Virus record (IMG/VR): IMGVR_UViG_3300032675_000001
Location: 296,684 to 360,683 of that record
DNA: 64,000 bases
Strand: one strand, 5' to 3'
Shown piece after piece: positions 1-49,386 of this stretch; positions within the stretch are counted from its first letter, which is position 1, and every line of letters begins with the position of its first letter. The position numbers and the translations under genes were made by a program. Below the pieces are notes generated by a model. It was not told where the DNA came from, ran no database searches, and saw only the letters and a list, made by a program, of their open reading frames with translations.

Positions 1-268
1 CATGACCAGTCAACGAACGGTCAATCAATCTGGAAAGCAAGTCGGAAAGTTCTTCCCATGGATTTTCAGCATTGATAATACCAGCAGATTCCGGAATCTG
101 CTTGATGCCGAAAGTAAGAAATGGATTATAGCAAGTGCGGATTCCATAAAGAAAACGCTGGGAAATTTCATTTCCAAGAATAGCGGCTTCATGCGCCTGC
201 CTGATCACATCTTCCTTGTGAAGGCGCGAATCGCTTTCATTCAGTTTCTTGAGCCAAGATGCAGACAC
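1..268 (-). CDS. lig: ATP-dependent DNA ligase, N-terminal part (runs off window)
   Basis: Not in ORF track. Manual translation from GTG at 268 after SD AGGAG: MSASWLKKLNESDSRLHKE...CYNPFLTFGIK...LIDRSLTGH, matching the T4 gp30-type ligase N-terminal pattern (YNP..TFG.K, L..R.LTG). Confidence 0.8.
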   Translation of the reverse strand, partial: MSASWLKKLNESDSRLHKEDVIRQAHEAAILGNEISQRFLYGIRTCYNPFLTFGIKQIPESAGIINAENPWEELSDLLSRLIDRSLTGH

Positions 269-291
269 GTAAAATCTCCTTAATATGCTTC

Positions 292-320
292 ACTATATAT
301 CAAAAAGATGTGCTTGTCAA
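292..320 (-). promoter_or_regulatory. sigma70-type early promoter
   Basis: TTGACA-N17-TATAGT upstream of ligase. Confidence 0.8.
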
Positions 321-526
321 TCTTGTTTGAGCAGCATCCATGTATATTCCTGTTCGGATATCCAAAAATCATCCGGCCAAGTTACGTCAGGGTAATCTCT
401 TAAGCGATATCCCCATTTAAACCACAGGGACTTTCCACTGCGTCCACACTTTCTTGGGAATAGAGAGAAATGCCGATCCCATTGCTGTTTGGGTTTATAA
501 ATATCATCACCAGAATAGAATGCCAT
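317..526 (-). CDS. hypothetical protein (69 aa), last gene of small-ORF array
   Basis: ATG at 526 overlaps TAA of upstream gene and follows GAGGTG SD. Confidence 0.75.
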   Translation of the reverse strand: MAFYSGDDIYKPKQQWDRHFSLFPRKCGRSGKSLWFKWGYRLRDYPDVTWPDDFWISEQEYTWMLLKQD

Positions 527-762
527 TACGACCACCTCAATAAAAATATCACAGCATCTTGTTCGGTGAAGAAACTGATTTCTTGCCAATCACAAATGCC
601 ATGGGAACCTCTTTTTGACAAATAAGACCTTGGATACTCTTGCTGCCACCGCGCCATAATGTCCTGAACAGTACTCATTGTCTTAAACTTATTGATTAAG
701 TTAAGCATTGCGTTCTGCGCTGCGCCTGCCTTCGCCATATTTACGTTAAGTGTGTAACTCAT
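526..762 (-). CDS. LRWS-family small protein
   Basis: C-terminus ISFFTEQDAVIFLLRWS; ATGA overlap at start. Confidence 0.8.
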   Translation of the reverse strand: MSYTLNVNMAKAGAAQNAMLNLINKFKTMSTVQDIMARWQQEYPRSYLSKRGSHGICDWQEISFFTEQDAVIFLLRWS

Positions 763-968
763 GACCAACTCAGGGTGACAAAGGTAGCAAGAGGATTCTC
801 GGTGTCATAGATTTCAACATATCCACCGAAATGCCCATTATTTACAGATTCAGAACGTGTTGTACAGCCGTTCTGCCACGTATTAGGACCCGAAGGACCA
901 AGTGATCTAGTCATAAGGTCGCTAATCTCTTTATACATCATTTTCGTATCTTTAAAATACAGTCTCAT
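759..968 (-). CDS. LRWS-family small protein
   Basis: C-terminus ATFVTLSWS; SD GAGGTG before ATG 968. Confidence 0.8.
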   Translation of the reverse strand: MRLYFKDTKMMYKEISDLMTRSLGPSGPNTWQNGCTTRSESVNNGHFGGYVEIYDTENPLATFVTLSWS

Positions 969-983
969 GACCACCTCAAAAAA

Positions 984-1190
984 CTATGAATGTAGCAGTG
1001 TTAAATATACCCAAGCTTTATCTGCTTCCTTAAAGGTACTATATGTTTTTGTAAAAAGCAAGGGAGAAGATATGATGTATGAAGTTGCAGCAGCATTCCA
1101 TTGGAACTTGGCCCCGCGTCCTCTACGCCGTTTAACCCTCTTCATCATAGTAAGTTTAGGATTGGACCTAATTACAGTTATCTTTTCCAT
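984..1190 (-). CDS. small protein in LRWS array (divergent member)
   Basis: TAATG overlap start; ends KAWVYLTLLHS. Confidence 0.7.
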   Translation of the reverse strand: MEKITVIRSNPKLTMMKRVKRRRGRGAKFQWNAAATSYIISSPLLFTKTYSTFKEADKAWVYLTLLHS

Positions 1191-1399
1191 TACGACCACC
1201 TCAACGCAAACCAAACAGCGTCCTCATCATCCACAAATTGCACAAACTTACCCTTCCAGCTTGGTCCGGGATAAAATCTATCCTTACAGTTTGGCCAACA
1301 CCAGTCTATTACTTCTTTCCTATCATGATGATTAAAATGCACATCGTGAAGTATTGGAACCTGAAGACCAAACTGTCCAATTGTTTTACAGGTAATCAT
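1190..1399 (-). CDS. LRWS-family small protein
   Basis: EVIDWC...FVQFVDDEDAVWFALRWS. Confidence 0.8.
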   Translation of the reverse strand: MITCKTIGQFGLQVPILHDVHFNHHDRKEVIDWCWPNCKDRFYPGPSWKGKFVQFVDDEDAVWFALRWS

Positions 1400-1605
1400 G
1401 TCCACCTCAACAGAAACCAAGCCAAATCACGATAGTTAATGAAACGAATGGAGAACAACCCATCGTCCCAAATGAACATATTGTTCTGTCTACACCACTT
1501 CTTAGCAGCATTTAGTGTATCTTGAACTTCTGACCAACGTTCCTCACCGAGATTATATTTCAGTTCTAGCCTATAAGGCTTACTATGTTCATGAACCCAT
1601 TTCAT
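1396..1605 (-). CDS. LRWS-family small protein
   Basis: AKKWC...IRFINYRDLAWFLLRWT. Confidence 0.8.
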   Translation of the reverse strand: MKWVHEHSKPYRLELKYNLGEERWSEVQDTLNAAKKWCRQNNMFIWDDGLFSIRFINYRDLAWFLLRWT

Positions 1606-1832
1606 GACCACCTCAAAACAAATAAAGTCATCTTGGATTCATCAGTAATATCAAGAAACCATCTGCGGGCTTTGCTGTCCCAATAAAGACGCCAACCAGT
1701 TCCACAACTGTCACACCAAAGTTCACCTGCATCAGCCGAAATGAGTGGTCCAACATTGTCATTTAACCATTCGTCAATGACACGAGACGGCATATCGGTG
1801 ATTACTGGGTAACTTGAAACATCTAAGATCAT
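1602..1832 (-). CDS. LRWS-family small protein
   Basis: IDEWL...DITDESKMTLFVLRWS. Confidence 0.8.
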   Translation of the reverse strand: MILDVSSYPVITDMPSRVIDEWLNDNVGPLISADAGELWCDSCGTGWRLYWDSKARRWFLDITDESKMTLFVLRWS

Positions 1833-2065
1833 GACCACATCATCCTAAAAAGCAATGCAACATTTTCGTCAGGTACTTCCACCCAACCATAAGTTTTTGA
1901 AGGAACCTCACAGTTATATCGCTCAGCCCATTCAAGAATCTCTTCTTTATTAGCAGCATAAAACTTTTCGTCAACCCAAAAAAAGGTTTTAACTGAAGGT
2001 TGGTAGGTGAAGCGAACACCCTGTTCCTTCAGTGTCCAGAGGCTCAGTGTCCAGAGGCAAGTCAT
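1829..2065 (-). CDS. LRWS-family small protein
   Basis: ILEWAE...VPDENVALLFRMMWS. Confidence 0.8.
   Translation of the reverse strand: MTCLWTLSLWTLKEQGVRFTYQPSVKTFFWVDEKFYAANKEEILEWAERYNCEVPSKTYGWVEVPDENVALLFRMMWS
2029..2058. repeat. perfect 15-bp tandem duplication (in frame)
   Basis: tcagtgtccagaggc x2, encoding CLWTL-SLWTL. Confidence 0.9.
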
Positions 2066-2268
2066 AGATACTTCAACGAAAAGGCTACATACCTTTTCTC
2101 ATCAATGATTTCAAACTGACGGTTTGCCCAGTCTACAAGACACAGACCAGCAGCAGGAACAATAACTTTGTTGATATACATATTACTGATACCAATACTT
2201 TTCCATTCATACCCGTTGTCAAACAACCATTTCATCAGATTGTTAAATGCCCACTCTGACATGTACAT
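2062..2268 (-). CDS. LRWS/LKY-family small protein
   Basis: LMKWLF...EIIDEKRYVAFSLKYL; ATGA coupling to next gene. Confidence 0.75.
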   Translation of the reverse strand: MYMSEWAFNNLMKWLFDNGYEWKSIGISNMYINKVIVPAAGLCLVDWANRQFEIIDEKRYVAFSLKYL

Positions 2269-2271
2269 GAG

Positions 2272-2463
2272 TCACCGCTGACGAAGCTTTTCGGTATCAC
2301 GGATGAACGAATGTGCCCAAAAGAAAAACAGTAAGAGATTCAACGCAATAGACCAGAAATGTGGGTGATTGTAATTATATGCGAGACTACTACTTGTAAT
2401 CAACAGGAACACGGCGTCCCAGATTACACACAGCCATGCGAAAAACTTTTGCCTATTAGTCAT
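2272..2463 (-). CDS. small 2-TM membrane protein
   Basis: two hydrophobic segments; gene-dense minus-strand run. Confidence 0.7.
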   Translation of the reverse strand: MTNRQKFFAWLCVIWDAVFLLITSSSLAYNYNHPHFWSIALNLLLFFFWAHSFIRDTEKLRQR

Positions 2464-2466
2464 TTT

Positions 2467-2694
2467 CTAATCTTTCAGTATAGTAAAGAGATCACCATAC
2501 TCGTATTCTAACACAACGCTATCCCTAAGTCTATAGTAGATTCGTCTGCGGTAGATTTTTTTGAGCCAAGTATATTTGTTCTCAACTTTAACGGGGAACC
2601 AAGCAAAATGATTTGCCCATTCGCCGCACGTCCTTTCACCAAATCCCCCATTACAAAAGTCTTTGATGATTGCTTCCCGTGCCCCGAAGATCAC
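2467..2694 (-). CDS. hypothetical protein
   Basis: HFAWFPVKV...WLKKIYRR, loosely similar to ORF 317-526 (HFSLFPRK..LWFKWGYR). Confidence 0.7.
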   Translation of the reverse strand: MIFGAREAIIKDFCNGGFGERTCGEWANHFAWFPVKVENKYTWLKKIYRRRIYYRLRDSVVLEYEYGDLFTILKD

Positions 2695-2697
2695 CGA

Positions 2698-2856
2698 TTA
2701 GTCTCCGCAAATCTGCTTAATCTCAGTCGCACTGCGATTGGATTGGGCATACGATTGCAGACAATCACTCTTGACATGTTCGGTATATCCGAGCGAACCA
2801 AACATTACCAAGAAGATGACCGCAATCGCAATCGCATACCATTTGAAATCGTCCAT
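2698..2856 (-). CDS. small membrane-anchored protein (52 aa)
   Basis: below ORF cutoff; MDDFKWYAIAIAVIFLVMFG...C...C fills the gap exactly. Confidence 0.65.
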   Translation of the reverse strand: MDDFKWYAIAIAVIFLVMFGSLGYTEHVKSDCLQSYAQSNRSATEIKQICGD

Positions 2857-2857
2857 T

Positions 2858-3505
2858 TTAAATCACCCTTACATAGTAAAGTTGAGTGGAATCTTCGCGG
2901 TGAGCCTTGACCTTACCCTCAATGTTCATGGTAGTGCCAGTGGCGACAAGACGCTTGAATCTGAAAAACACCGACTCGTTATCGGGAGTGATTCCAGTGA
3001 TGAAAAACGTGTCCCATGGTTGAGAATGGTTACAGCGAAGTACTTCAATCTCCAGTTGCACCTTGTCGCCAACTTGACCAATGTGACCATTAGCATCACG
3101 CAGCCGACGATTGATTGCAGCCTTTTTTTCATTGCGAAGATAGCAAGAAGGAAGCGAAGAAATAAACCCGACTTCAAACAGACCAACATCTTCGCTGTTG
3201 GCATATGCCATAGCTTTAGATTCAAACTCAGAGAGAACGCCGCCCTGCAAAATCTTGAAAGTAAGAGCCTGAAAATGACGAATGACATGCTCAGCCATTT
3301 CACAATCTTCATCACGGATGTCAAACTTTCCGTCGATAAAGTCGCGAGTCAGATACTTATTGGCAATACGCTTCTGATCACCATGTTCGTCATATTCACC
3401 CTGCTTGAGATATTCACCATTCACGCGGTGAGCAGCACATGCTGCATCAAACACTTTACGAGTGTTGAAGCGAATGGAAGCACCCGAAACACGAGAATAA
3501 GCCAT
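2858..3505 (-). CDS. hypothetical protein with probable C-terminal OB-fold
   Basis: G.VGDKV.LEIEV...IEGKVKAH..TQL pattern; SD AAGGA and own sigma70-like promoter at 3537-3565. Confidence 0.6.
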   Translation of the reverse strand: MAYSRVSGASIRFNTRKVFDAACAAHRVNGEYLKQGEYDEHGDQKRIANKYLTRDFIDGKFDIRDEDCEMAEHVIRHFQALTFKILQGGVLSEFESKAMAYANSEDVGLFEVGFISSLPSCYLRNEKKAAINRRLRDANGHIGQVGDKVQLEIEVLRCNHSQPWDTFFITGITPDNESVFFRFKRLVATGTTMNIEGKVKAHREDSTQLYYVRVI

Positions 3506-3571
3506 TTTGAAATCCTTTGTTAGAATCTATGGGTGGTATATAGACTAACACAAAACCTATGTCAACAGCTT

Positions 3572-4513
3572 TTATTCGGAGCCGTAACAATTATTTACTC
3601 CGGGTTCTCCGCCAATCAAGTCACCCAATGTCTGATTCCACTTTATGATACTGTCAGTATCATGAAACCTAGACCTCAACTCTTTTCTAACTTTTCTAAA
3701 ATCAAACCAGTCTTCTCTGCCAGTAATAGTAGTTTCCCAGCCAAAACTTTTGTGACGAAGTTCAAGGTTTCCGAATCCCATGTTTTCTAACATTCTTTTT
3801 TTGAGATATCGTATTTTTAAATTATCCCCATCAATATTATCTGGGTCCTCTTCATGAACTTTTATATGCTCTTTAATGAAGAAGATGTTGGATTCAAGGC
3901 TATGGCTTAGCATATTGCCTATGCCAGAAATGCCATTTTCTTGCATGAAAATGTCATAGAAGCAATATTCATGCCGAAGGGGGCTGTAAACTTTCCTACC
4001 TATATTAAGCTGTGGCCAAGTATAATCTCCGCCAATAACTGGACATGAAACACATTGTCCCAACAACCACATATGGGCAGCAACATGCGGCATGGTCAAT
4101 TTATAGGGTTCCATGTATTTTATGTGATCGCCGTTTCCAAAGAAGCTTTCTACATCTAAATCTATCAAAACATGCTTGATTTGGTTTTCTCTGCAAAACT
4201 TTTCTGCATAGTATAGATCATGCGTATTAAAGGGACTTTGTTTATATATAAGCCTCAGTGTCATTGCAACTACTGGGATTTTATTTTGTAAACATGATAT
4301 CAGTGAACATTCACTATCCAATCCTCCGCTGTATAAGATTTCTGCTGGAACATTTTTTCCATAAAAATGTTCAGCCATTGCGGATTGAACGGAATCAAAA
4401 TTTGAAATTTCGGTATCTGAAATTTCAGTAGTAAAGATGTTACGTTCAGGGCCGAACTCCATCGTATGTTTACGGTAGTTGTTCAGCCCTGAATGCCAAG
4501 TTTTTGCAGTCAT
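3572..4513 (-). CDS. PP-loop (asparagine synthase/adenine nucleotide alpha-hydrolase-like) protein
   Basis: YSGGLDSEC PP-loop motif; TAAATA 4 nt before ATG 4513. Confidence 0.6.
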   Translation of the reverse strand: MTAKTWHSGLNNYRKHTMEFGPERNIFTTEISDTEISNFDSVQSAMAEHFYGKNVPAEILYSGGLDSECSLISCLQNKIPVVAMTLRLIYKQSPFNTHDLYYAEKFCRENQIKHVLIDLDVESFFGNGDHIKYMEPYKLTMPHVAAHMWLLGQCVSCPVIGGDYTWPQLNIGRKVYSPLRHEYCFYDIFMQENGISGIGNMLSHSLESNIFFIKEHIKVHEEDPDNIDGDNLKIRYLKKRMLENMGFGNLELRHKSFGWETTITGREDWFDFRKVRKELRSRFHDTDSIIKWNQTLGDLIGGEPGVNNCYGSE

Positions 4514-24573: not shown

Positions 24574-26631
24574 TTATTTTGATGTTGCCCTGTACACCCC
24601 ATCCCAATCTCTAGGTTTTGGTGGATTCTGTTGTATCTCTTTGATCCTATCTTGCATCATTAAGTAATAAGATTTCAGTACGCCGTTCCAGTTATTTTCC
24701 ATAGCCTGTGCAAAACCCAATGCTCTGTTCCAAGCACCCATTCTATATGCATCCATGAATCGTTGATGTGCTAGTTGCGCTTTTGCGTCCTTGTGCTCCA
24801 ACACCGTATAGATTCTGGAAGGTTCTGTTTTGCCCTTGACTGCGATAAGATCAAGTTCAACGACCTGATACTTGTCTTTCACGTATTCTGCGGTTTTGGG
24901 ACCAATAATGATTTTAACCCCGTAAGGCTTGCTTTGACCTTCCAGCCTACTTGCGAGATTAACGCCATCACCCAGACAAGTATAATCAAACCGCTGGTCG
25001 CTGCCCATATTGCCGACAACAACAGTATCAGTATTAATACCGAGACCCATTCCAAAAGCTGGTACGCCTTCTTTTTTGACTTCATTGTTAAATTCCTCCA
25101 ATGCTTTCAACATCTGAAACGCTGTTTTTACTGCATCCAATGCGTGTTTCTCATTGTTTACAGGTGCGTTCCAGAATGCCATTTGAGCATCACCTATATA
25201 CTTATCAAGCGTACCTTTGTTCTCAAGAATTGCTTTGGTCATCGCTGTCATGTAGCGATTCATAATCTTGGTCAATCCTTGAACGTCCTTGCCATAATGT
25301 TCTGAGATTGTAGTGAAACCACGAACATCCGTGAACATGATGGACAGTTCTTGCTCAGTGCCTCCTAGCTGTAATAGTTCTGGTTGACGCTGTAGTTGTG
25401 CAACAAGATCAGGACTCAAATAAGTTCCAAACTGCTTCTTGATCTGCTGCTTTTGTAGAAACTCATTGATGAATTTTACACTGTAAACATGCAAATAAAT
25501 AATGAGAGCAGACAAGAAGTTGAATGAAATATCAAACAATATCTTATTATGACTATATAGATATACAGGAGTATAAGCATATCCGATCAGTAATATTCCA
25601 ATCCAAACAATGGAATATCTTAGATTAGACAAGCCTATAACTGCTAGTGAAAGAAGCACAAATGCCAGAAGATCAACCAGCCCAACCCAATTCGGAATTG
25701 ACACAGAATCCTGATTTATCAGAGTCTGAAGAATGCTGGCCTGAACCTGATGGGGCATTTTGGCACCAGCCGGAGTCGCTACTGGGTTTGCGATCCCGCT
25801 CGCAGTCACACCGAGTAGAACGATCTTTCCATCGAGACGAGGAATATTCTCGCCTACTTCAAACGATGAGAATTCGGAATTCGGATTAATAAACACACGA
25901 CCATATTCATCTGTAGGAATTTTACCAAACTGTGGAACACGAACAGCCTCAACACCAGTCTCATTTATTTTCGCTTGATAGCTTGGATCACCAGCAGCGA
26001 CACGCAACAGTTCTAAGGCGAACGAAGGGTAGTATTCGCCATTTGAAGTCCCTAATAAAGGCATTCGGCGCACAACCCCATCCGTCTCGGGAAGAGTTGT
26101 TGTTATGCCGACACCTACAGCGGATTGTTGAAGAACTGGAATGTTATCAAGAACACAAGGATAGTTCGGAAGAAACTGAGTTGGTTTCCCGTCACCGATT
26201 ACAGCAACACCTGTGCGGCGAGTCTGACGATTATCCCTAGTGCAATCGGTTGAAAGTGTTTGGCTAAGCACTACAGGGTGATTTGCTAACGCATTTGCAA
26301 AGGCATCATCACCATTGAATCTATCTTTTTCCGGATAGAGAATGGTGCTTCCAACAAGACCAGCATGACCATTATCGTAAATGTCATTGATAATCTTGGC
26401 ATAAGTGTCTCTAGGGAATGGATATTGTCCGTATTTTTCTATTGCTTTCTCGCCAATATTTGCAATGACGATTTGATCAGAATGTACAGGCTTGCCTAGC
26501 ATAAGATAATCATAAAACTTAAGCTTCATCGCATCAACTAGATACGGATTGGAAAGCTTGACGATAAGAAGTAATGTTAAAGTGAAAAGAGCCATCCAAG
26601 GACTCAATAGGATTTTTCGTAGTTTTTTCAT
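24574..26631 (-). CDS. CHASE2-domain class III adenylate cyclase
   Basis: N-term TM; CHASE2 (G.YPFPR, DGVVRR.P); 3 TM; MFTDVRGFT, DKYIGDA, GDGVNLASRLE; Lys/Thr-type ATP specificity. Confidence 0.93.
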   Translation of the reverse strand: MKKLRKILLSPWMALFTLTLLLIVKLSNPYLVDAMKLKFYDYLMLGKPVHSDQIVIANIGEKAIEKYGQYPFPRDTYAKIINDIYDNGHAGLVGSTILYPEKDRFNGDDAFANALANHPVVLSQTLSTDCTRDNRQTRRTGVAVIGDGKPTQFLPNYPCVLDNIPVLQQSAVGVGITTTLPETDGVVRRMPLLGTSNGEYYPSFALELLRVAAGDPSYQAKINETGVEAVRVPQFGKIPTDEYGRVFINPNSEFSSFEVGENIPRLDGKIVLLGVTASGIANPVATPAGAKMPHQVQASILQTLINQDSVSIPNWVGLVDLLAFVLLSLAVIGLSNLRYSIVWIGILLIGYAYTPVYLYSHNKILFDISFNFLSALIIYLHVYSVKFINEFLQKQQIKKQFGTYLSPDLVAQLQRQPELLQLGGTEQELSIMFTDVRGFTTISEHYGKDVQGLTKIMNRYMTAMTKAILENKGTLDKYIGDAQMAFWNAPVNNEKHALDAVKTAFQMLKALEEFNNEVKKEGVPAFGMGLGINTDTVVVGNMGSDQRFDYTCLGDGVNLASRLEGQSKPYGVKIIIGPKTAEYVKDKYQVVELDLIAVKGKTEPSRIYTVLEHKDAKAQLAHQRFMDAYRMGAWNRALGFAQAMENNWNGVLKSYYLMMQDRIKEIQQNPPKPRDWDGVYRATSK

Positions 26632-46457: not shown

Positions 46458-47153
46458 TTAGTCTGGACGCTTTTCCAATTTGAAAGATTTACCAGTAATA
46501 TTAGGAAACAAAAGATGCATCATAGTCAACACTGATTCATTATTGTAATCAATTGTGCAGTTATCTCGCAACCAAATACGCTTGTATCCACTAGTAGACC
46601 TTAACCAGTTTTCAAGCGGAAGATTGCAATAAAGATCAGGAGTCCTTCTTACGTAGTCTAGAAGTTCTTCTCTAATCTCAAGTTCTACCCTCTTGTTCTT
46701 CAAATGCAATCTATACTTAAACTTTGGTTCTTTTGCAAAATACTTTACCCCAGCAGGCATGAGTTTAACTTCCGTGATTGTTGCAGCTTGGCTAATCTTT
46801 TTTACACCATCAAAAAGAGTAATGTCATTAGAAAAAAATGAAATGCTATCTCGTTCGTGTCGAGTTCCAGTATCAGGTTCGTTATTGAATTTCTTTTTGA
46901 ATGCTAGTATTTTTCCTAATTTTTTATACTCTGCTTCTGTCGGGTGAACAAATTCTGCTAACTGATACTTTTCCTTATTCAGTTCGTGAAACGTAGCATC
47001 ATATTCGATTCGTTCCCTTAATTCTTTTATGCTATTGCACCAGTACGCAAGATATAGAAACGGATGACTGATAGCAACTCTGTACTTATATTTGCTATAG
47101 TACAGAGTGCTACGTTGCTCAACCTTCAACTTCAATGATGCCATCTTCGCCAA
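46458..47153 (-). CDS. hypothetical protein (two internal KYKY/KFKY repeats)
   Basis: ORF overlapping clpA end. Confidence 0.7.
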   Translation of the reverse strand: MAKMASLKLKVEQRSTLYYSKYKYRVAISHPFLYLAYWCNSIKELRERIEYDATFHELNKEKYQLAEFVHPTEAEYKKLGKILAFKKKFNNEPDTGTRHERDSISFFSNDITLFDGVKKISQAATITEVKLMPAGVKYFAKEPKFKYRLHLKNKRVELEIREELLDYVRRTPDLYCNLPLENWLRSTSGYKRIWLRDNCTIDYNNESVLTMMHLLFPNITGKSFKLEKRPD

Positions 47154-49386
47154 CTCGTGCGGTTTGCTTTACGGTAACATCAAAGACAATCTGACCATCT
47201 TCCATGTTAGCCATGATGTTCGCATCCTTGATACGTTCAAAGAGAATCTTCTTTGAAAGCGGAACACGAATGAGTTCATCAATCTTACGACCAAGCGGAC
47301 GAGCACCCATCTTGGGATCATATCCCTTATCAGCAAGGTAATCAATCACAGGCTCACTCAGGTTAAGAGTGATATTGTGCTTTTCGTTGAGCGGCTTCTT
47401 CACATCTTCCAAGAACTTCACAACGATCTTCTTAATTGAAAGCGTATCCAACTTGTTGAACTTGCAGACAAGATCAAGACGATTACGGAACTCAGGCTTG
47501 AAGAACTGCTTCAGTGCCTTATCGTCTTCTCCGGTCTTTTCAAGATCACCAAAGCCGATATTGTTACGTTCATTGTCAGCCGAACCCAAGTTTGAAGTAA
47601 GAATGATGATCGTGTTCTTGCACGACACTTCCTTACCGTTGGAGCCAGTGATACGACCTTCATCAAGCATCTGCAAGAAGATGTTGAAAATATCAGGATG
47701 TGCCTTTTCAACTTCGTCAAACAGAAGAATAGAATGCGGGTTCTTGCTCAAGTCTGAAATCAAACGTCCACCTTGAACCTGTGAATCGCTGAAGCCAACA
47801 TAACCTGGGGGAGGACCGATCAAGCTGCTTACGCTGTGCTTCTCACTGTATTCCGACATGTCATACTTGTGAAGCGGCATATCCAAGTTCTTGGACAGCA
47901 ACTTTGCCAACTCTGTTTTACCAGTTCCCGTTGGACCCAAGAACAAGAAGCTCGCAATCGGCTTCTTTTCGTTACCGATCCCCGCAAACGAGACATATAC
48001 ACGCTCAAGAACATCGTTGACGGTCTTATCCTGACCATACAGCTTGTCCTTGACGTTTGCTTCAAGATTCTGAACACGATCCATGTTGTCTCCGCTAAGT
48101 TTATCAGCAGGTACACCAGTGAACTTTTCAACCTGTTCGTGAATCAACTTCTTAGTAATGATTGCTTCATCGTTGCCAAGAACCTTCTGCTTCGCACAAG
48201 CGGCATCAAGCAAGTCAATAGCCTTGTCAGGGTTCTTGCGATCATGAATATACCGGGCAGCACTATCAACAGCAGCTTCAACGGCTTCCTGAGTGATGTT
48301 CACATTATGGAAGTCATTCAATCGTGCAGACAGACCACTCAAAATGCGAATGGTAGAGTCGTGCGAAGGCTCGTCAATGCTGACGCGATAAAAACGGCGC
48401 ATCAAAGCACGGTCCTTCTCAAAAGACTCGTAAAACTCTTCCCACGTGGTAGAAGCAATGACCTTGAGAGTACCCTTAGTGATAGCAGGCTTGATCATGC
48501 TCGCAAAGTCAGGACCGCTGTTGCCAGCATTCCCTGCACCCTGCATAGTATGCGCTTCGTCAATGAAGAGAATCGCCTTCTTCTTGGCATTCAATGCTTC
48601 AAGAACGTTCTTGATCTTTTCCTCAAAGTCACCGCGATAACGCGAACCAGCCAGCAACGAACCAACTTCAAGCGAGTAAAGTTCATGGTCAAGCAAGAAG
48701 TCAGGAACTTCCTTGTTTACGATTGCCTGTGCAATACCTTCTGCGATTGCAGTCTTACCAACGCCCGGATCACCAACCATAAGCACGTTAGACTTGAAAC
48801 GCTTGGCGAGAACATTGACAATATCATCAATCTCAGTAGCACGACCGATCACCGGCTCAAGCTTTTCATCACGAGCAAGCTGAGTGAGATTGATAGTATA
48901 TTCTTCAAGGATTTCATCAGCCTGAGAATCACTGATGGTGCTGCTTGAAACTCCGCCCTTGTAGTTCTTTTCCCAATGACGAACAAAATCAGTCTTGGTG
49001 ATGCCGTACTTTAGCAAAAAGTAATGAGCATGTGAGTTGCCCTCACTTGCAATAGAAAGATACAGATCAATCGTGGTAACCTGACGGCGACCTGTAAAAA
49101 GAACCTGCGTAACTGAACGATTCATCACACGTTCAAGCGCATTAGTCTTGCGTGGATTGCAGTTTGGATCAGTGGATTCGATTGCATGAAGAGAGTTTAC
49201 ATATGCCTCAACTTCAGAAATCATAAGATCAGTGTCAACATTGAACTGATTCATGCACTTTTTGAACGGTGGGTGAGTGATCAGTGCCAGCAATAGATGC
49301 TCAATCGTGCAATACTGATGCTGACGAGTCTTTGCAGCCTCAACTGCGCGTTCAATAATATTTTCAATTTCAGGTGACGTTTGCAA
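47119..49386 (-). CDS. clpA: ATP-dependent Clp protease ATPase subunit
   Basis: Clp-N EHLLLAL; GDPGVGKT/FIDE; GPTGTGKT/FDEVEKAH; IGF-type loop (NIGFG); no ClpB middle domain. Confidence 0.93.
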   Translation of the reverse strand: MQTSPEIENIIERAVEAAKTRQHQYCTIEHLLLALITHPPFKKCMNQFNVDTDLMISEVEAYVNSLHAIESTDPNCNPRKTNALERVMNRSVTQVLFTGRRQVTTIDLYLSIASEGNSHAHYFLLKYGITKTDFVRHWEKNYKGGVSSSTISDSQADEILEEYTINLTQLARDEKLEPVIGRATEIDDIVNVLAKRFKSNVLMVGDPGVGKTAIAEGIAQAIVNKEVPDFLLDHELYSLEVGSLLAGSRYRGDFEEKIKNVLEALNAKKKAILFIDEAHTMQGAGNAGNSGPDFASMIKPAITKGTLKVIASTTWEEFYESFEKDRALMRRFYRVSIDEPSHDSTIRILSGLSARLNDFHNVNITQEAVEAAVDSAARYIHDRKNPDKAIDLLDAACAKQKVLGNDEAIITKKLIHEQVEKFTGVPADKLSGDNMDRVQNLEANVKDKLYGQDKTVNDVLERVYVSFAGIGNEKKPIASFLFLGPTGTGKTELAKLLSKNLDMPLHKYDMSEYSEKHSVSSLIGPPPGYVGFSDSQVQGGRLISDLSKNPHSILLFDEVEKAHPDIFNIFLQMLDEGRITGSNGKEVSCKNTIIILTSNLGSADNERNNIGFGDLEKTGEDDKALKQFFKPEFRNRLDLVCKFNKLDTLSIKKIVVKFLEDVKKPLNEKHNITLNLSEPVIDYLADKGYDPKMGARPLGRKIDELIRVPLSKKILFERIKDANIMANMEDGQIVFDVTVKQTARVGEDGIIEVEG

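What the first reader, a model, noticed from the sequence alone, without database searches (positions are those of the whole stretch)
965..986. Orphan LRWS junction outside any reading frame
Seen: ORF 984-1190 stops at TAG (984-986), yet a perfect TTTTTGAGGTGGTCATGA follows it. In that frame a TAA lies only a few codons upstream, so here the motif encodes no protein end. Inference: it is the remnant of a deleted or replaced member whose junction was kept. This supports selection on, or recombination at, the DNA/RNA motif rather than only on the LRWS peptide.
Basis: partly seen in the sequence, partly recalled or inferred. Interest (0 to 1): 0.6.

Follow-up and report, generated by a model that had tools for sequence, protein, structure and literature searches.

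The report
Leftover gene junction, now ribosome site
An 18-base motif that normally both ends one small phage gene and starts the next sits here between two genes, coding for nothing, and most likely works only as the ribosome-binding site and start codon of the downstream gene; it is a scar of gene-cassette swapping in a lake jumbo phage, and its mechanism is ordinary.

Summary
On the minus strand, ORF 984-1190 stops at TAG (986-984). One base later comes TTTTTGAGGTGGTCATGA (982-965). In that frame a TAA (1003-1001) lies 11 codons before the TGA.

The motif is the standard junction of a tandem array of small paralogous genes in a 360-kb T4-type lake phage. Normally it is read twice. It encodes Leu-Arg-Trp-Ser-stop of gene n. 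It also carries a Shine-Dalgarno site (GAGGTGGTC, 9 predicted pairs with the 16S tail), 5 bases of spacing and an ATGA stop/start overlap for gene n+1.

Here only the second role remains: ATG 968-966 opens a conserved 69-aa gene. ORF984 has its own decayed junction (LLHS-TAG), which is conserved in orthologues and has no Shine-Dalgarno site.

There is no sequencing error. Contigs from four lake runs and five other assemblies are identical at this site.

A relative has a full family member ending in frame at this slot. Homology blocks between strains start and stop at the junction motifs.

The peptide is also under selection elsewhere in the family. This is an ordinary mechanism in a modestly interesting setting.

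The parts
965..982 (-). Orphan junction motif TTTTTGAGGTGGTCATGA. It is non-coding here.
   Evidence: Exact match. TAA lies 11 codons upstream in its frame. It is identical in L004, L013 and L014-L016 and in contigs of four runs.
969..977 (-). Shine-Dalgarno element GAGGTGGTC
   Evidence: Predicted 9-bp duplex with an E. coli-type 16S 3' tail, -15.5 kcal/mol. GAGG lies 5 nt before the ATG, within the spacing range of this genome's other genes.
966..968 (-). ATG start codon of the downstream gene
   Evidence: Orthologues start at the same ATG (L017 TAATGAGACTG; L005 ..ATGAGATTATAT).
759..968 (-). Downstream gene (69 aa, begins MRLYF, ends LSWS-stop). It is served by the orphan motif.
   Evidence: Orthologues at 96%, 87% and 79% identity. 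dN/dS about 0.17 against L017.
984..1190 (-). ORF984 (68 aa), a family member with a divergent end ..AWVYLTLLHS-TAG
   Evidence: Orthologues at 99%, 76% and 57% identity end LLHS, LVHS and LKY. dN/dS about 0.23 against L009.
984..998 (-). ORF984's own decayed junction CTGCTACATTCATAG, with no Shine-Dalgarno site and no ATG
   Evidence: It is homologous to CTGGTGCACTCATGA (an ATGA overlap) in the 76% orthologue. Duplex with the 16S tail is only -1.6 kcal/mol.
1188..1207 (-). Canonical junction upstream of ORF984 (..ALRWS-stop, TAATG overlap)
   Evidence: Homology with L014-L016 begins exactly here.
759..776 (-). Junction after the MRLYF gene (CTGAGTTGGTCATGA, LSWS-stop with ATGA overlap)
   Evidence: Homology with L014-L017 ends exactly here.
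524..543 (-). Canonical junction (LLRWS-stop, TAATG overlap)
1396..1413 (-). Junction variant (LLRWT-stop, ATGA overlap)
1602..1619 (-). Canonical junction (VLRWS-stop, ATGA overlap)
1829..1846 (-). Junction variant (RMMWS-stop, ATGA overlap)
317..2268 (-). Gap-free tandem array of nine small paralogous genes (68-78 aa). It lies between small membrane-like ORFs and the DNA ligase gene.
   Evidence: A syntenic but reshuffled array exists in a 57% relative, L005.

Best explanation
[quoted passage not shown] At normal junctions the same letters are also the last codons (Leu-Arg-Trp-Ser-stop) of the upstream family member, with the stop overlapping the next start (ATGA or TAATG). That arrangement couples the genes translationally.

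At this slot the upstream neighbour is ORF984. Its lineage had already lost the canonical end (LLHS/LVHS) and has no Shine-Dalgarno site of its own. When ORF984 came to lie in front of MRLYF by cassette rearrangement, the last ~18 bases of the previous neighbour, or equivalently MRLYF's own leader, stayed. They were kept by selection because MRLYF would otherwise lack a ribosome-binding site.

Shown: the anatomy, conservation, frames, absence of sequencing error, the alternative occupant in a relative, and breakpoints at junctions. Inferred: ribosome binding, translational coupling, and the order of events.
For: 1. Anatomy. TAG, one T, then the motif with its ATG. Every other copy in the genome sits at a stop/start overlap of family genes.

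2. Shine-Dalgarno quality. Predicted duplex with the 16S tail is -15.5 kcal/mol over 9 contiguous pairs. ORF984's own end gives -1.6 and a generic AAGGAG gives -9.2. This genome's long ORFs use AGGAG, GGAG and GAGG 5-9 nt before the ATG.

3. Both flanking genes are real. They have orthologues and dN/dS of 0.23 and 0.17.

4. ORF984's LLHS/LVHS end is ancestral. The 76% orthologue ends CTGGTGCACTCATGA with its own ATGA overlap onto a different neighbour.

5. The slot holds other occupants in relatives. In L017 a 95-aa member ends in frame ..LLRYS-stop with TAATG onto MRLYF. In L005 a ..WFILKEL-stop member precedes MRLYF.

6. Mosaic boundaries. Window versus L014-L016 is 98.4% identical only over 1205-759. 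Window versus L017 is homologous only over 982-759, starting exactly at the orphan motif.

7. Wider census. Across 51 loci, 50% of 222 internal ends of homology blocks lie within 5 nt of a junction motif, against 10% for random points.

8. Nucleotide constraint beyond the peptide. TTG is used in 228 of 305 ends and AGG in 239 of 305. The last codon is NNA in at least 238 of 305, whatever the residue, which gives the A of ATGA. In strain L013 the Ser codon has become a stop at two junctions while the Shine-Dalgarno site and ATG are intact.

9. No indel or variant in the contigs of four runs.
Against: - No expression or ribosome data exist; no RNA run holds the locus. The host, and therefore its 16S tail, is unknown.
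- A 9-bp Shine-Dalgarno duplex that ends right at the ATG is unusually long. Very strong sites can slow ribosome clearance.
- Canonical DNA is sometimes kept without a coupled start: 19 of 574 sites, for example the lone member in front of an HNH gene. So the Shine-Dalgarno function is not the only force keeping the letters.
- Breakpoints at gene borders are also what selection for intact genes would leave after random recombination. Recombination at the motif is therefore not proven.
- The join TCATAG-T-motif is not what a precise motif-to-motif exchange would give.
Confidence: 0.8

Rival explanations
1. Sequencing or assembly indel: ORF984 really runs on in frame to ..LRWS-stop and the orphan is an artefact.
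For: A similar orphan in another contig (L084) is explained by a 1-base shift in a T run (..MTFFY-stop, with the TGA inside TTGAGG). The family normally ends in LRWS.
Against: The TAG precedes the T6 run, and the 14 bases where an indel would have to lie hold no homopolymer. The sequence is identical in contigs of 4 runs from 3 studies and in L004, L013 and L014-L016. The 76% orthologue keeps His-Ser-stop at the same position. A fused protein would be 5-6 residues longer than the family alignment allows.
Confidence: 0.02
2. The motif is ORF984's own original LRWS end, pushed out of frame by a 19-base insertion that carries a stop.
For: The paralogue in the second array ends ..EKAWVYLTLRWS-stop. 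Relative to it, ORF984 has 19 extra bases between ..YLT and TTGAGGTGGTCAT.
Against: Orthologues at 76% identity end CTGGTGCACTCATGA, codon for codon in the place of TTGAGGTGGTCATGA, with an ATGA overlap and no second motif behind. LLHS/LVHS is therefore the diverged junction itself, not an insert. Homology with L017 starts at the orphan motif and travels with MRLYF, not with ORF984.
Confidence: 0.06
3. The motif is mainly a recombination site or a binding site for a phage- or host-encoded factor (as was left open for start-associated sequences), not merely a Shine-Dalgarno site. The orphan is kept for that role.
For: The motif is conserved as exact 21-specified-base DNA in at least 118 IMG/VR stretches, with up to 20 copies in 11.6 kb. 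Breakpoints are enriched at motifs. The DNA is kept at 19 ORF ends without a coupled start. One coexisting contig shares only the junction motifs with the window (X17 record 3).
Against: Every conserved letter is already explained by the Leu-Arg-Trp codons, 16S pairing and the ATGA overlap. There is no hairpin or inverted repeat (z -0.05) and no promoter or terminator at the site. Fifteen to 24 bases is short for efficient homologous exchange. No recombinase is linked to the arrays.
Confidence: 0.1
4. Programmed +1 frameshift or stop bypass gives ORF984 an LRWS tail in a fraction of ribosomes.
For: The LRWS frame is +1 to ORF984 and is open from TAA 1003-1001. A stop codon next to a strong Shine-Dalgarno site loosely recalls prfB.
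Against: There is no slippery codon: a tRNA on UCA cannot re-pair on CAU. The Shine-Dalgarno site lies downstream of the stop, not 3 nt upstream as in prfB. The orthologue in L009 has no second frame to shift into. There is no stimulatory RNA structure.
Confidence: 0.02

Closest known systems
Translational coupling by overlapping stop/start (ATGA, TAATG) with the Shine-Dalgarno site inside the upstream gene's last codons (textbook operon feature; my own knowledge)
   Same: The stop of gene n overlaps the start of gene n+1. GAGG lies 5 nt before the ATG. The Shine-Dalgarno site constrains the last codons of the upstream gene.
   Different: Here one near-identical 15-24-base junction is reused at hundreds of junctions of one fast-evolving small-protein family (494 of 574 sites). 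At the orphan copy the coding role is lost and the stop lies 15 nt upstream.
PeSL cassettes (promoter-early stem-loops) of T4-type phages (Arbiol et al. 2010, PMC2839356; Comeau et al. 2014, PMC4122927)
   Same: The phage is T4-type (Gp23 capsid). Variable regions full of small ORFans are flanked by a repeated regulatory motif. Insertions and replacements between close strains are bounded by the motif.
   Different: PeSLs are ~100-bp intergenic units made of a sigma-70 promoter and a terminator hairpin. This motif is 15-24 bases, acts in translation, mostly lies inside coding sequence, and has no promoter or hairpin. Mini-circles were not tested here.
Start-associated sequences (SAS) of Cluster K mycobacteriophages (Pope et al. 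2011, PMC3203893)
   Same: Both are short asymmetric repeats in one orientation, placed a few bases before start codons of non-structural genes. Both contain a Shine-Dalgarno core, prefer ATG, and sometimes contain the stop of the upstream gene.
   Different: The sequence differs (GGGATAGGAGCCC versus TTGAGGTGGTCATGA). SAS precede genes of many unrelated families, whereas this motif is tied to one family's C-terminus. All its letters can pair with 16S or are codons, so no extra factor is needed.
Conserved boundary or linker sequences in mosaic phage genomes (modular theory; discussed in PMC3974807, which cites earlier work)
   Same: Short conserved sequences at gene borders coincide with the ends of exchanged modules.
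   Different: In this case the boundary sequence has an obvious function of its own and is dual-coded. Whether it targets recombination or merely survives selection is unresolved, as in the classical debate.

Membership tests
Shine-Dalgarno ribosome-binding site with coupled start | Purine-rich stretch complementary to the 3' end of 16S rRNA | tested here: met
The host's own 16S is unknown.
Shine-Dalgarno ribosome-binding site with coupled start | Spacing to the start codon in the range used by the genome's other genes | tested here: met
   GAGG is followed by 5 nt and then ATG. The GAGG spacing histogram of 260 long ORFs peaks at 5-7 nt.
Shine-Dalgarno ribosome-binding site with coupled start | The start codon opens a conserved, selected ORF | tested here: met
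   MRLYF orthologues at 79-96% identity, the same ATG, dN/dS about 0.17.
Shine-Dalgarno ribosome-binding site with coupled start | Ribosome binding or initiation shown experimentally | not testable with these tools
   No RNA run holds the locus. The host is uncultured.
Coding C-terminus of the LRWS small-protein family | Motif read in frame as the last codons of an ORF of 35 or more codons | tested here: not met
   TAA lies 11 codons upstream. By contrast 513 of 574 GAGGTGG sites in related loci are ORF ends.
PeSL cassette (T4-type phages) | Sigma-70-like early promoter plus terminator stem-loop within the repeat | tested here: not met
   No promoter-like or terminator-like site at 960-1000. 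RNA fold z-score is -0.05.
PeSL cassette (T4-type phages) | Repeat flanks genes that differ between close strains | tested here: met
   Block ends at window 1205, 982 and 759. 50% against 10% of ends lie within 5 nt of a motif.
Start-associated sequence (Cluster K) | 13-bp consensus GGGATAGGAGCCC | tested here: not met
   The sequence differs by inspection (PMC3203893).
Integron-like attC cassette site | Imperfect inverted repeats that fold into a hairpin recombination site | tested here: not met
   No inverted repeat or stable fold. Presence of an integrase was not examined.
Programmed frameshift site | Slippery codon with re-pairing in the new frame plus a stimulator | tested here: not met
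   CAT TCA TAG T offers no re-pairing. The Shine-Dalgarno site is downstream of the stop. There is no RNA structure.

The most novel reading that the evidence does not exclude
The dual-coded junction (Leu-Arg-Trp codons, extended Shine-Dalgarno site and ATGA overlap) may be the recombination substrate of a cassette system in T4-type lake jumbo phages. Small genes would be excised, inserted and swapped by exchange within the 15-24-base motif, so that each arrives ready-coupled for translation. This would be a translational counterpart of PeSL shuffling. Orphan copies such as this one would be the scars of imprecise events.
Probability: 0.3. Interest if true: 0.55.

Novelty: new member of a known kind. 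Interest (0 to 1): 0.33.

Why it matters
For this locus, the finding settles annotation. The motif is not a broken gene or an error. ORF984 ends at the TAG and the next gene starts at ATG 968-966.

More broadly, the array shows cleanly that a short sequence can be selected at two levels at once. At the peptide level, Leu-Arg/Lys-aromatic forms the end of a C-terminal helix. At the mRNA level, it is a Shine-Dalgarno site and an overlapping start. The rare orphan copies separate the two.

The junction is very common in uncultured lake phages: at least 118 IMG/VR stretches, and arrays of 20 or more copies. Strain-level breakpoints pile up at it. That makes these arrays a good natural system for an old question: are phage mosaic boundaries targeted by short homologies, or only filtered by selection?

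Tried and rejected
- Phage database searches found nothing. I tried megablast of window 1-4000 and tblastn of four proteins against 50,697 GenBank phage records. The phage and the family are known only from metagenomes.
- Pfam and PHROGs scans of the nine array proteins gave nothing credible. A profile of 37 family members against PDB sequences gave nothing. The ESM Atlas returned only unnamed viral clusters.
- The AlphaFold model is weak (pLDDT 66). I used it only to say that LRW ends a C-terminal helix, and ran no fold search on it.
- My first idea was that a 19-base insertion had displaced ORF984's own LRWS end. I rejected it after finding the orthologues.
- A sequencing indel is rejected.
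- RNA structure at the site is rejected, as are a promoter or terminator at the site.
- A +1 frameshift is rejected by inspection.
- My first breakpoint census used a faulty pattern and is void. One search is the corrected run.
- I did not run the large representative-protein search. It was not needed, because no claim here rests on absence of relatives.

Full report
**What is there**

The window is the last 64 kb of a 360,683-bp virus record. The record has direct terminal repeats, a CheckV completeness estimate of 100%, and a T4-type major capsid protein (Gp23, 327 bits). It has no close or distant match among 50,697 GenBank phage records. It is abundant in lake-water metagenomes.

Window 317-2268 carries a gap-free tandem array of nine small genes (68-78 aa) on the minus strand. 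The array lies between small membrane-like ORFs and a DNA ligase gene. The proteins are only about 20% identical to each other. They share a Trp-containing helix and a C-terminal module: a beta-strand, acidic residues, then ..(A)xWFxLRWS. A modest AlphaFold model (pLDDT 66) places LRW at the end of the C-terminal helix. No Pfam, PHROG or PDB family matches.

**The junction**

At most gene borders the DNA reads TTGAGGTGGTC followed by ATGA or by (A/G)TAATG. These letters carry two messages:
- the last codons and stop of gene n;
- for gene n+1, a Shine-Dalgarno element, 5 bases of spacing and an ATG that overlaps the stop.

GAGGUGGUC can form nine contiguous pairs (one G-U) with an E. coli-type 16S 3' tail, at a predicted -15.5 kcal/mol. 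A perfect complement, GAGGUGAUC, would place UGA in the LRWS frame. Trp (UGG) is therefore the nearest sense solution; this point is my inference. The genome's long ORFs use AGGAG, GGAG or GAGG 5-9 nt before the ATG.

**The finding itself**

ORF984 (ATG 1190-1188) stops at TAG 986-984. After one T comes the exact 18-mer, at 982-965. In its frame a TAA (1003-1001) lies 11 codons upstream, so this copy ends no protein. ATG 968-966, inside the motif, opens a 69-aa gene that begins MRLYF. This gene has orthologues at 96%, 87% and 79% identity that use the same start. Its dN/dS is about 0.17.

ORF984 is also a real gene. It has orthologues at 99%, 76% and 57% identity and a dN/dS of about 0.23. Its odd end is old. 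The 76% orthologue ends ..YLTLVHS with CTGGTGCACTCATGA, which aligns codon for codon with the canonical junction and keeps an ATGA overlap onto a different downstream gene. The window's CTGCTACATTCATAG is therefore ORF984's own decayed junction. It has no ATG and essentially no pairing with 16S (-1.6 kcal/mol). Without the extra motif, MRLYF would have no ribosome-binding site.

**Not an artefact**

The TAG precedes the T6 run, so an indel in that run could not fuse the frames. Contigs from four lake runs (three studies) cover the site with no difference and no indel. An IMG/VR contig (L004), a Logan contig (L013) and three ENA contigs (L014-L016) carry the same TAG, T run and motif.

**How it probably arose**

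The arrays are reshuffled between close relatives.
- Against L014-L016 the window is 98.4% identical only from 1205 to 759. This block runs from the junction in front of ORF984 to the ATGA after MRLYF, with unrelated cassettes on both sides.
- Against L017 homology runs only from 982 to 759, starting exactly at the orphan motif.
- In L017 the slot before MRLYF holds a full 95-aa family member ending in frame ..ALLRYS-stop, with a TAATG overlap.
- In a 57% relative (L005) a ..WFILKEL-stop member sits there.
- In L009-L012 the ORF984 orthologue sits in the counterpart of this genome's second array.

The join next to ORF984 (TCATAG, T, motif) is not what a precise motif-to-motif exchange would give, so the event was probably imprecise.

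**How general it is**

One 11.6-kb locus holds up to 20 copies, and several of the contigs are 240-400 kb long.

The census covered 119 sequences: the loci fetched in that scan plus this genome, 1.39 Mb in all. It found 574 GAGGTGG sites:
- 494 are both the end of an ORF and the start of the next;
- 19 are ORF ends without a coupled start;
- 5 (3 distinct cases, including this one) are orphans followed by a start;
- 6 are orphans without a start;
- 50 fall outside these classes.

One other orphan (L030) looks like ours: a family gene with its own end..FAMRWN-stop, then a 30-base spacer, then the canonical motif. The third (L084) is a 1-base shift in a T run.

**Two levels of selection**

Among 305 family ends that did not match the scan pattern, Leu is TTG in 228 and Arg is AGG in 239. 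Genome-wide usage of these codons is 21% and 7%. The last codon is NNA in at least 238, whatever the residue, which supplies the A of ATGA. In strain L013 the Ser codon has become a stop at two junctions while the Shine-Dalgarno site and the ATG are untouched. All of this is selection at the nucleotide level.

The peptide is selected too. Arg is kept with AGA or CGN codons in 66 ends. The common variants are conservative (LKWS, LRYS, LKYS, LRFS). One member of this genome writes SLRWS as CTAAGATGGAGTTAA.

**Recombination at the motif**

Of 222 internal ends of homology blocks (at least 90% identical) inside arrays of 51 loci, 50% lie within 5 nt of a junction motif, against 10% of random nearby points. 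This fits exchange at the motif. It is also what selection for intact genes would leave after random recombination, and the ends are not independent events. I treat targeted recombination as possible, not shown.

**Comparison with known systems**

The mechanism is ordinary Shine-Dalgarno-led, coupled translation. As a repeated regulatory motif bounding variable ORFans in a T4-type phage, it resembles PeSLs (PMC2839356). It lacks their promoter and hairpin. As a conserved repeat a few bases before start codons, it resembles the start-associated sequences of Cluster K mycobacteriophages (PMC3203893), but the sequence differs and it is tied to one protein family. It also fits the older notion of conserved boundary sequences in mosaic phages (PMC3974807).

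**Verdict**

The mechanism is ordinary: a ribosome-binding site and start codon left over from a cassette junction. The setting is a widespread dual-coded junction that may guide cassette shuffling, which is of moderate interest.

Noticed in passing
G000:C1:108447-111213 (L001 2448-5214, minus strand): A second array of about ten family genes (66-156 aa) uses the same junction. It lies between two radical-SAM-like ORFs (410 and 493 aa). One junction encodes SLRWS with different codons (CTAAGATGGAGTTAA), and the next gene starts 10 nt inside it.
   Followed up: partly
L002 1973-2173 (+) and 2233-2990 (+) = G000:C1 ~222973-223990: A lone family member ends with the canonical DNA (TTGAGGTGGTCATAA) but has no coupled start. 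It is followed by an HNH-type endonuclease gene with its own GAGGT site. The endonuclease may have inserted at a former junction.
   Followed up: no
L013 2740-2760 and 3160-3172: In a ~95% identical strain, the Ser codon of two junctions has mutated to a stop (TGGTAGTAATG; TGGTAATGAG). This shortens the proteins by one residue while the Shine-Dalgarno site and ATG stay intact.
   Followed up: partly
window 292-320 (-): A near-consensus sigma-70 promoter (TTGACA, 17 nt, TATAGT; 11 of 12 positions) has a -35 box that overlaps the stop codon of the last array gene. It lies just upstream of the DNA ligase gene (2-268, minus strand).
   Followed up: no
window 2029-2058 (-): A 15-base tandem duplication (CAGTGTCCAGAGGC plus one base, twice) lies at the 5' end of gene 1832-2065 and gives the repeated peptide LWTLSLWTL.
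   Followed up: no
window 24574-26631 (-): The phage encodes a 685-aa protein with a CHASE2 sensor domain and an adenylate/guanylate cyclase domain (Pfam E 4e-38 and 1e-21). Nearby are a ClpB-like double AAA+ ATPase (47119-49386), an amidoligase-domain protein and a tandem GGACT/AIG2 protein. This is an unusual cargo for a T4-type phage.
   Followed up: no
Read-laying run X17, record 3: A 1,212-base contig from the same lake sample matches the window only at three junction motifs (523-546, 1396-1420, 1602-1622), in a different order. It is a coexisting array built from other cassettes. Contigs of runs X19 and X20 also tend to break near junctions.
   Followed up: partly
L089 (IMGVR_UViG_3300044613_002694): This locus holds 20 exact copies of the 24-base junction pattern within 11.6 kb, and the same 94-kb contig has 6 more in two other stretches. 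It is the densest array seen.
   Followed up: no
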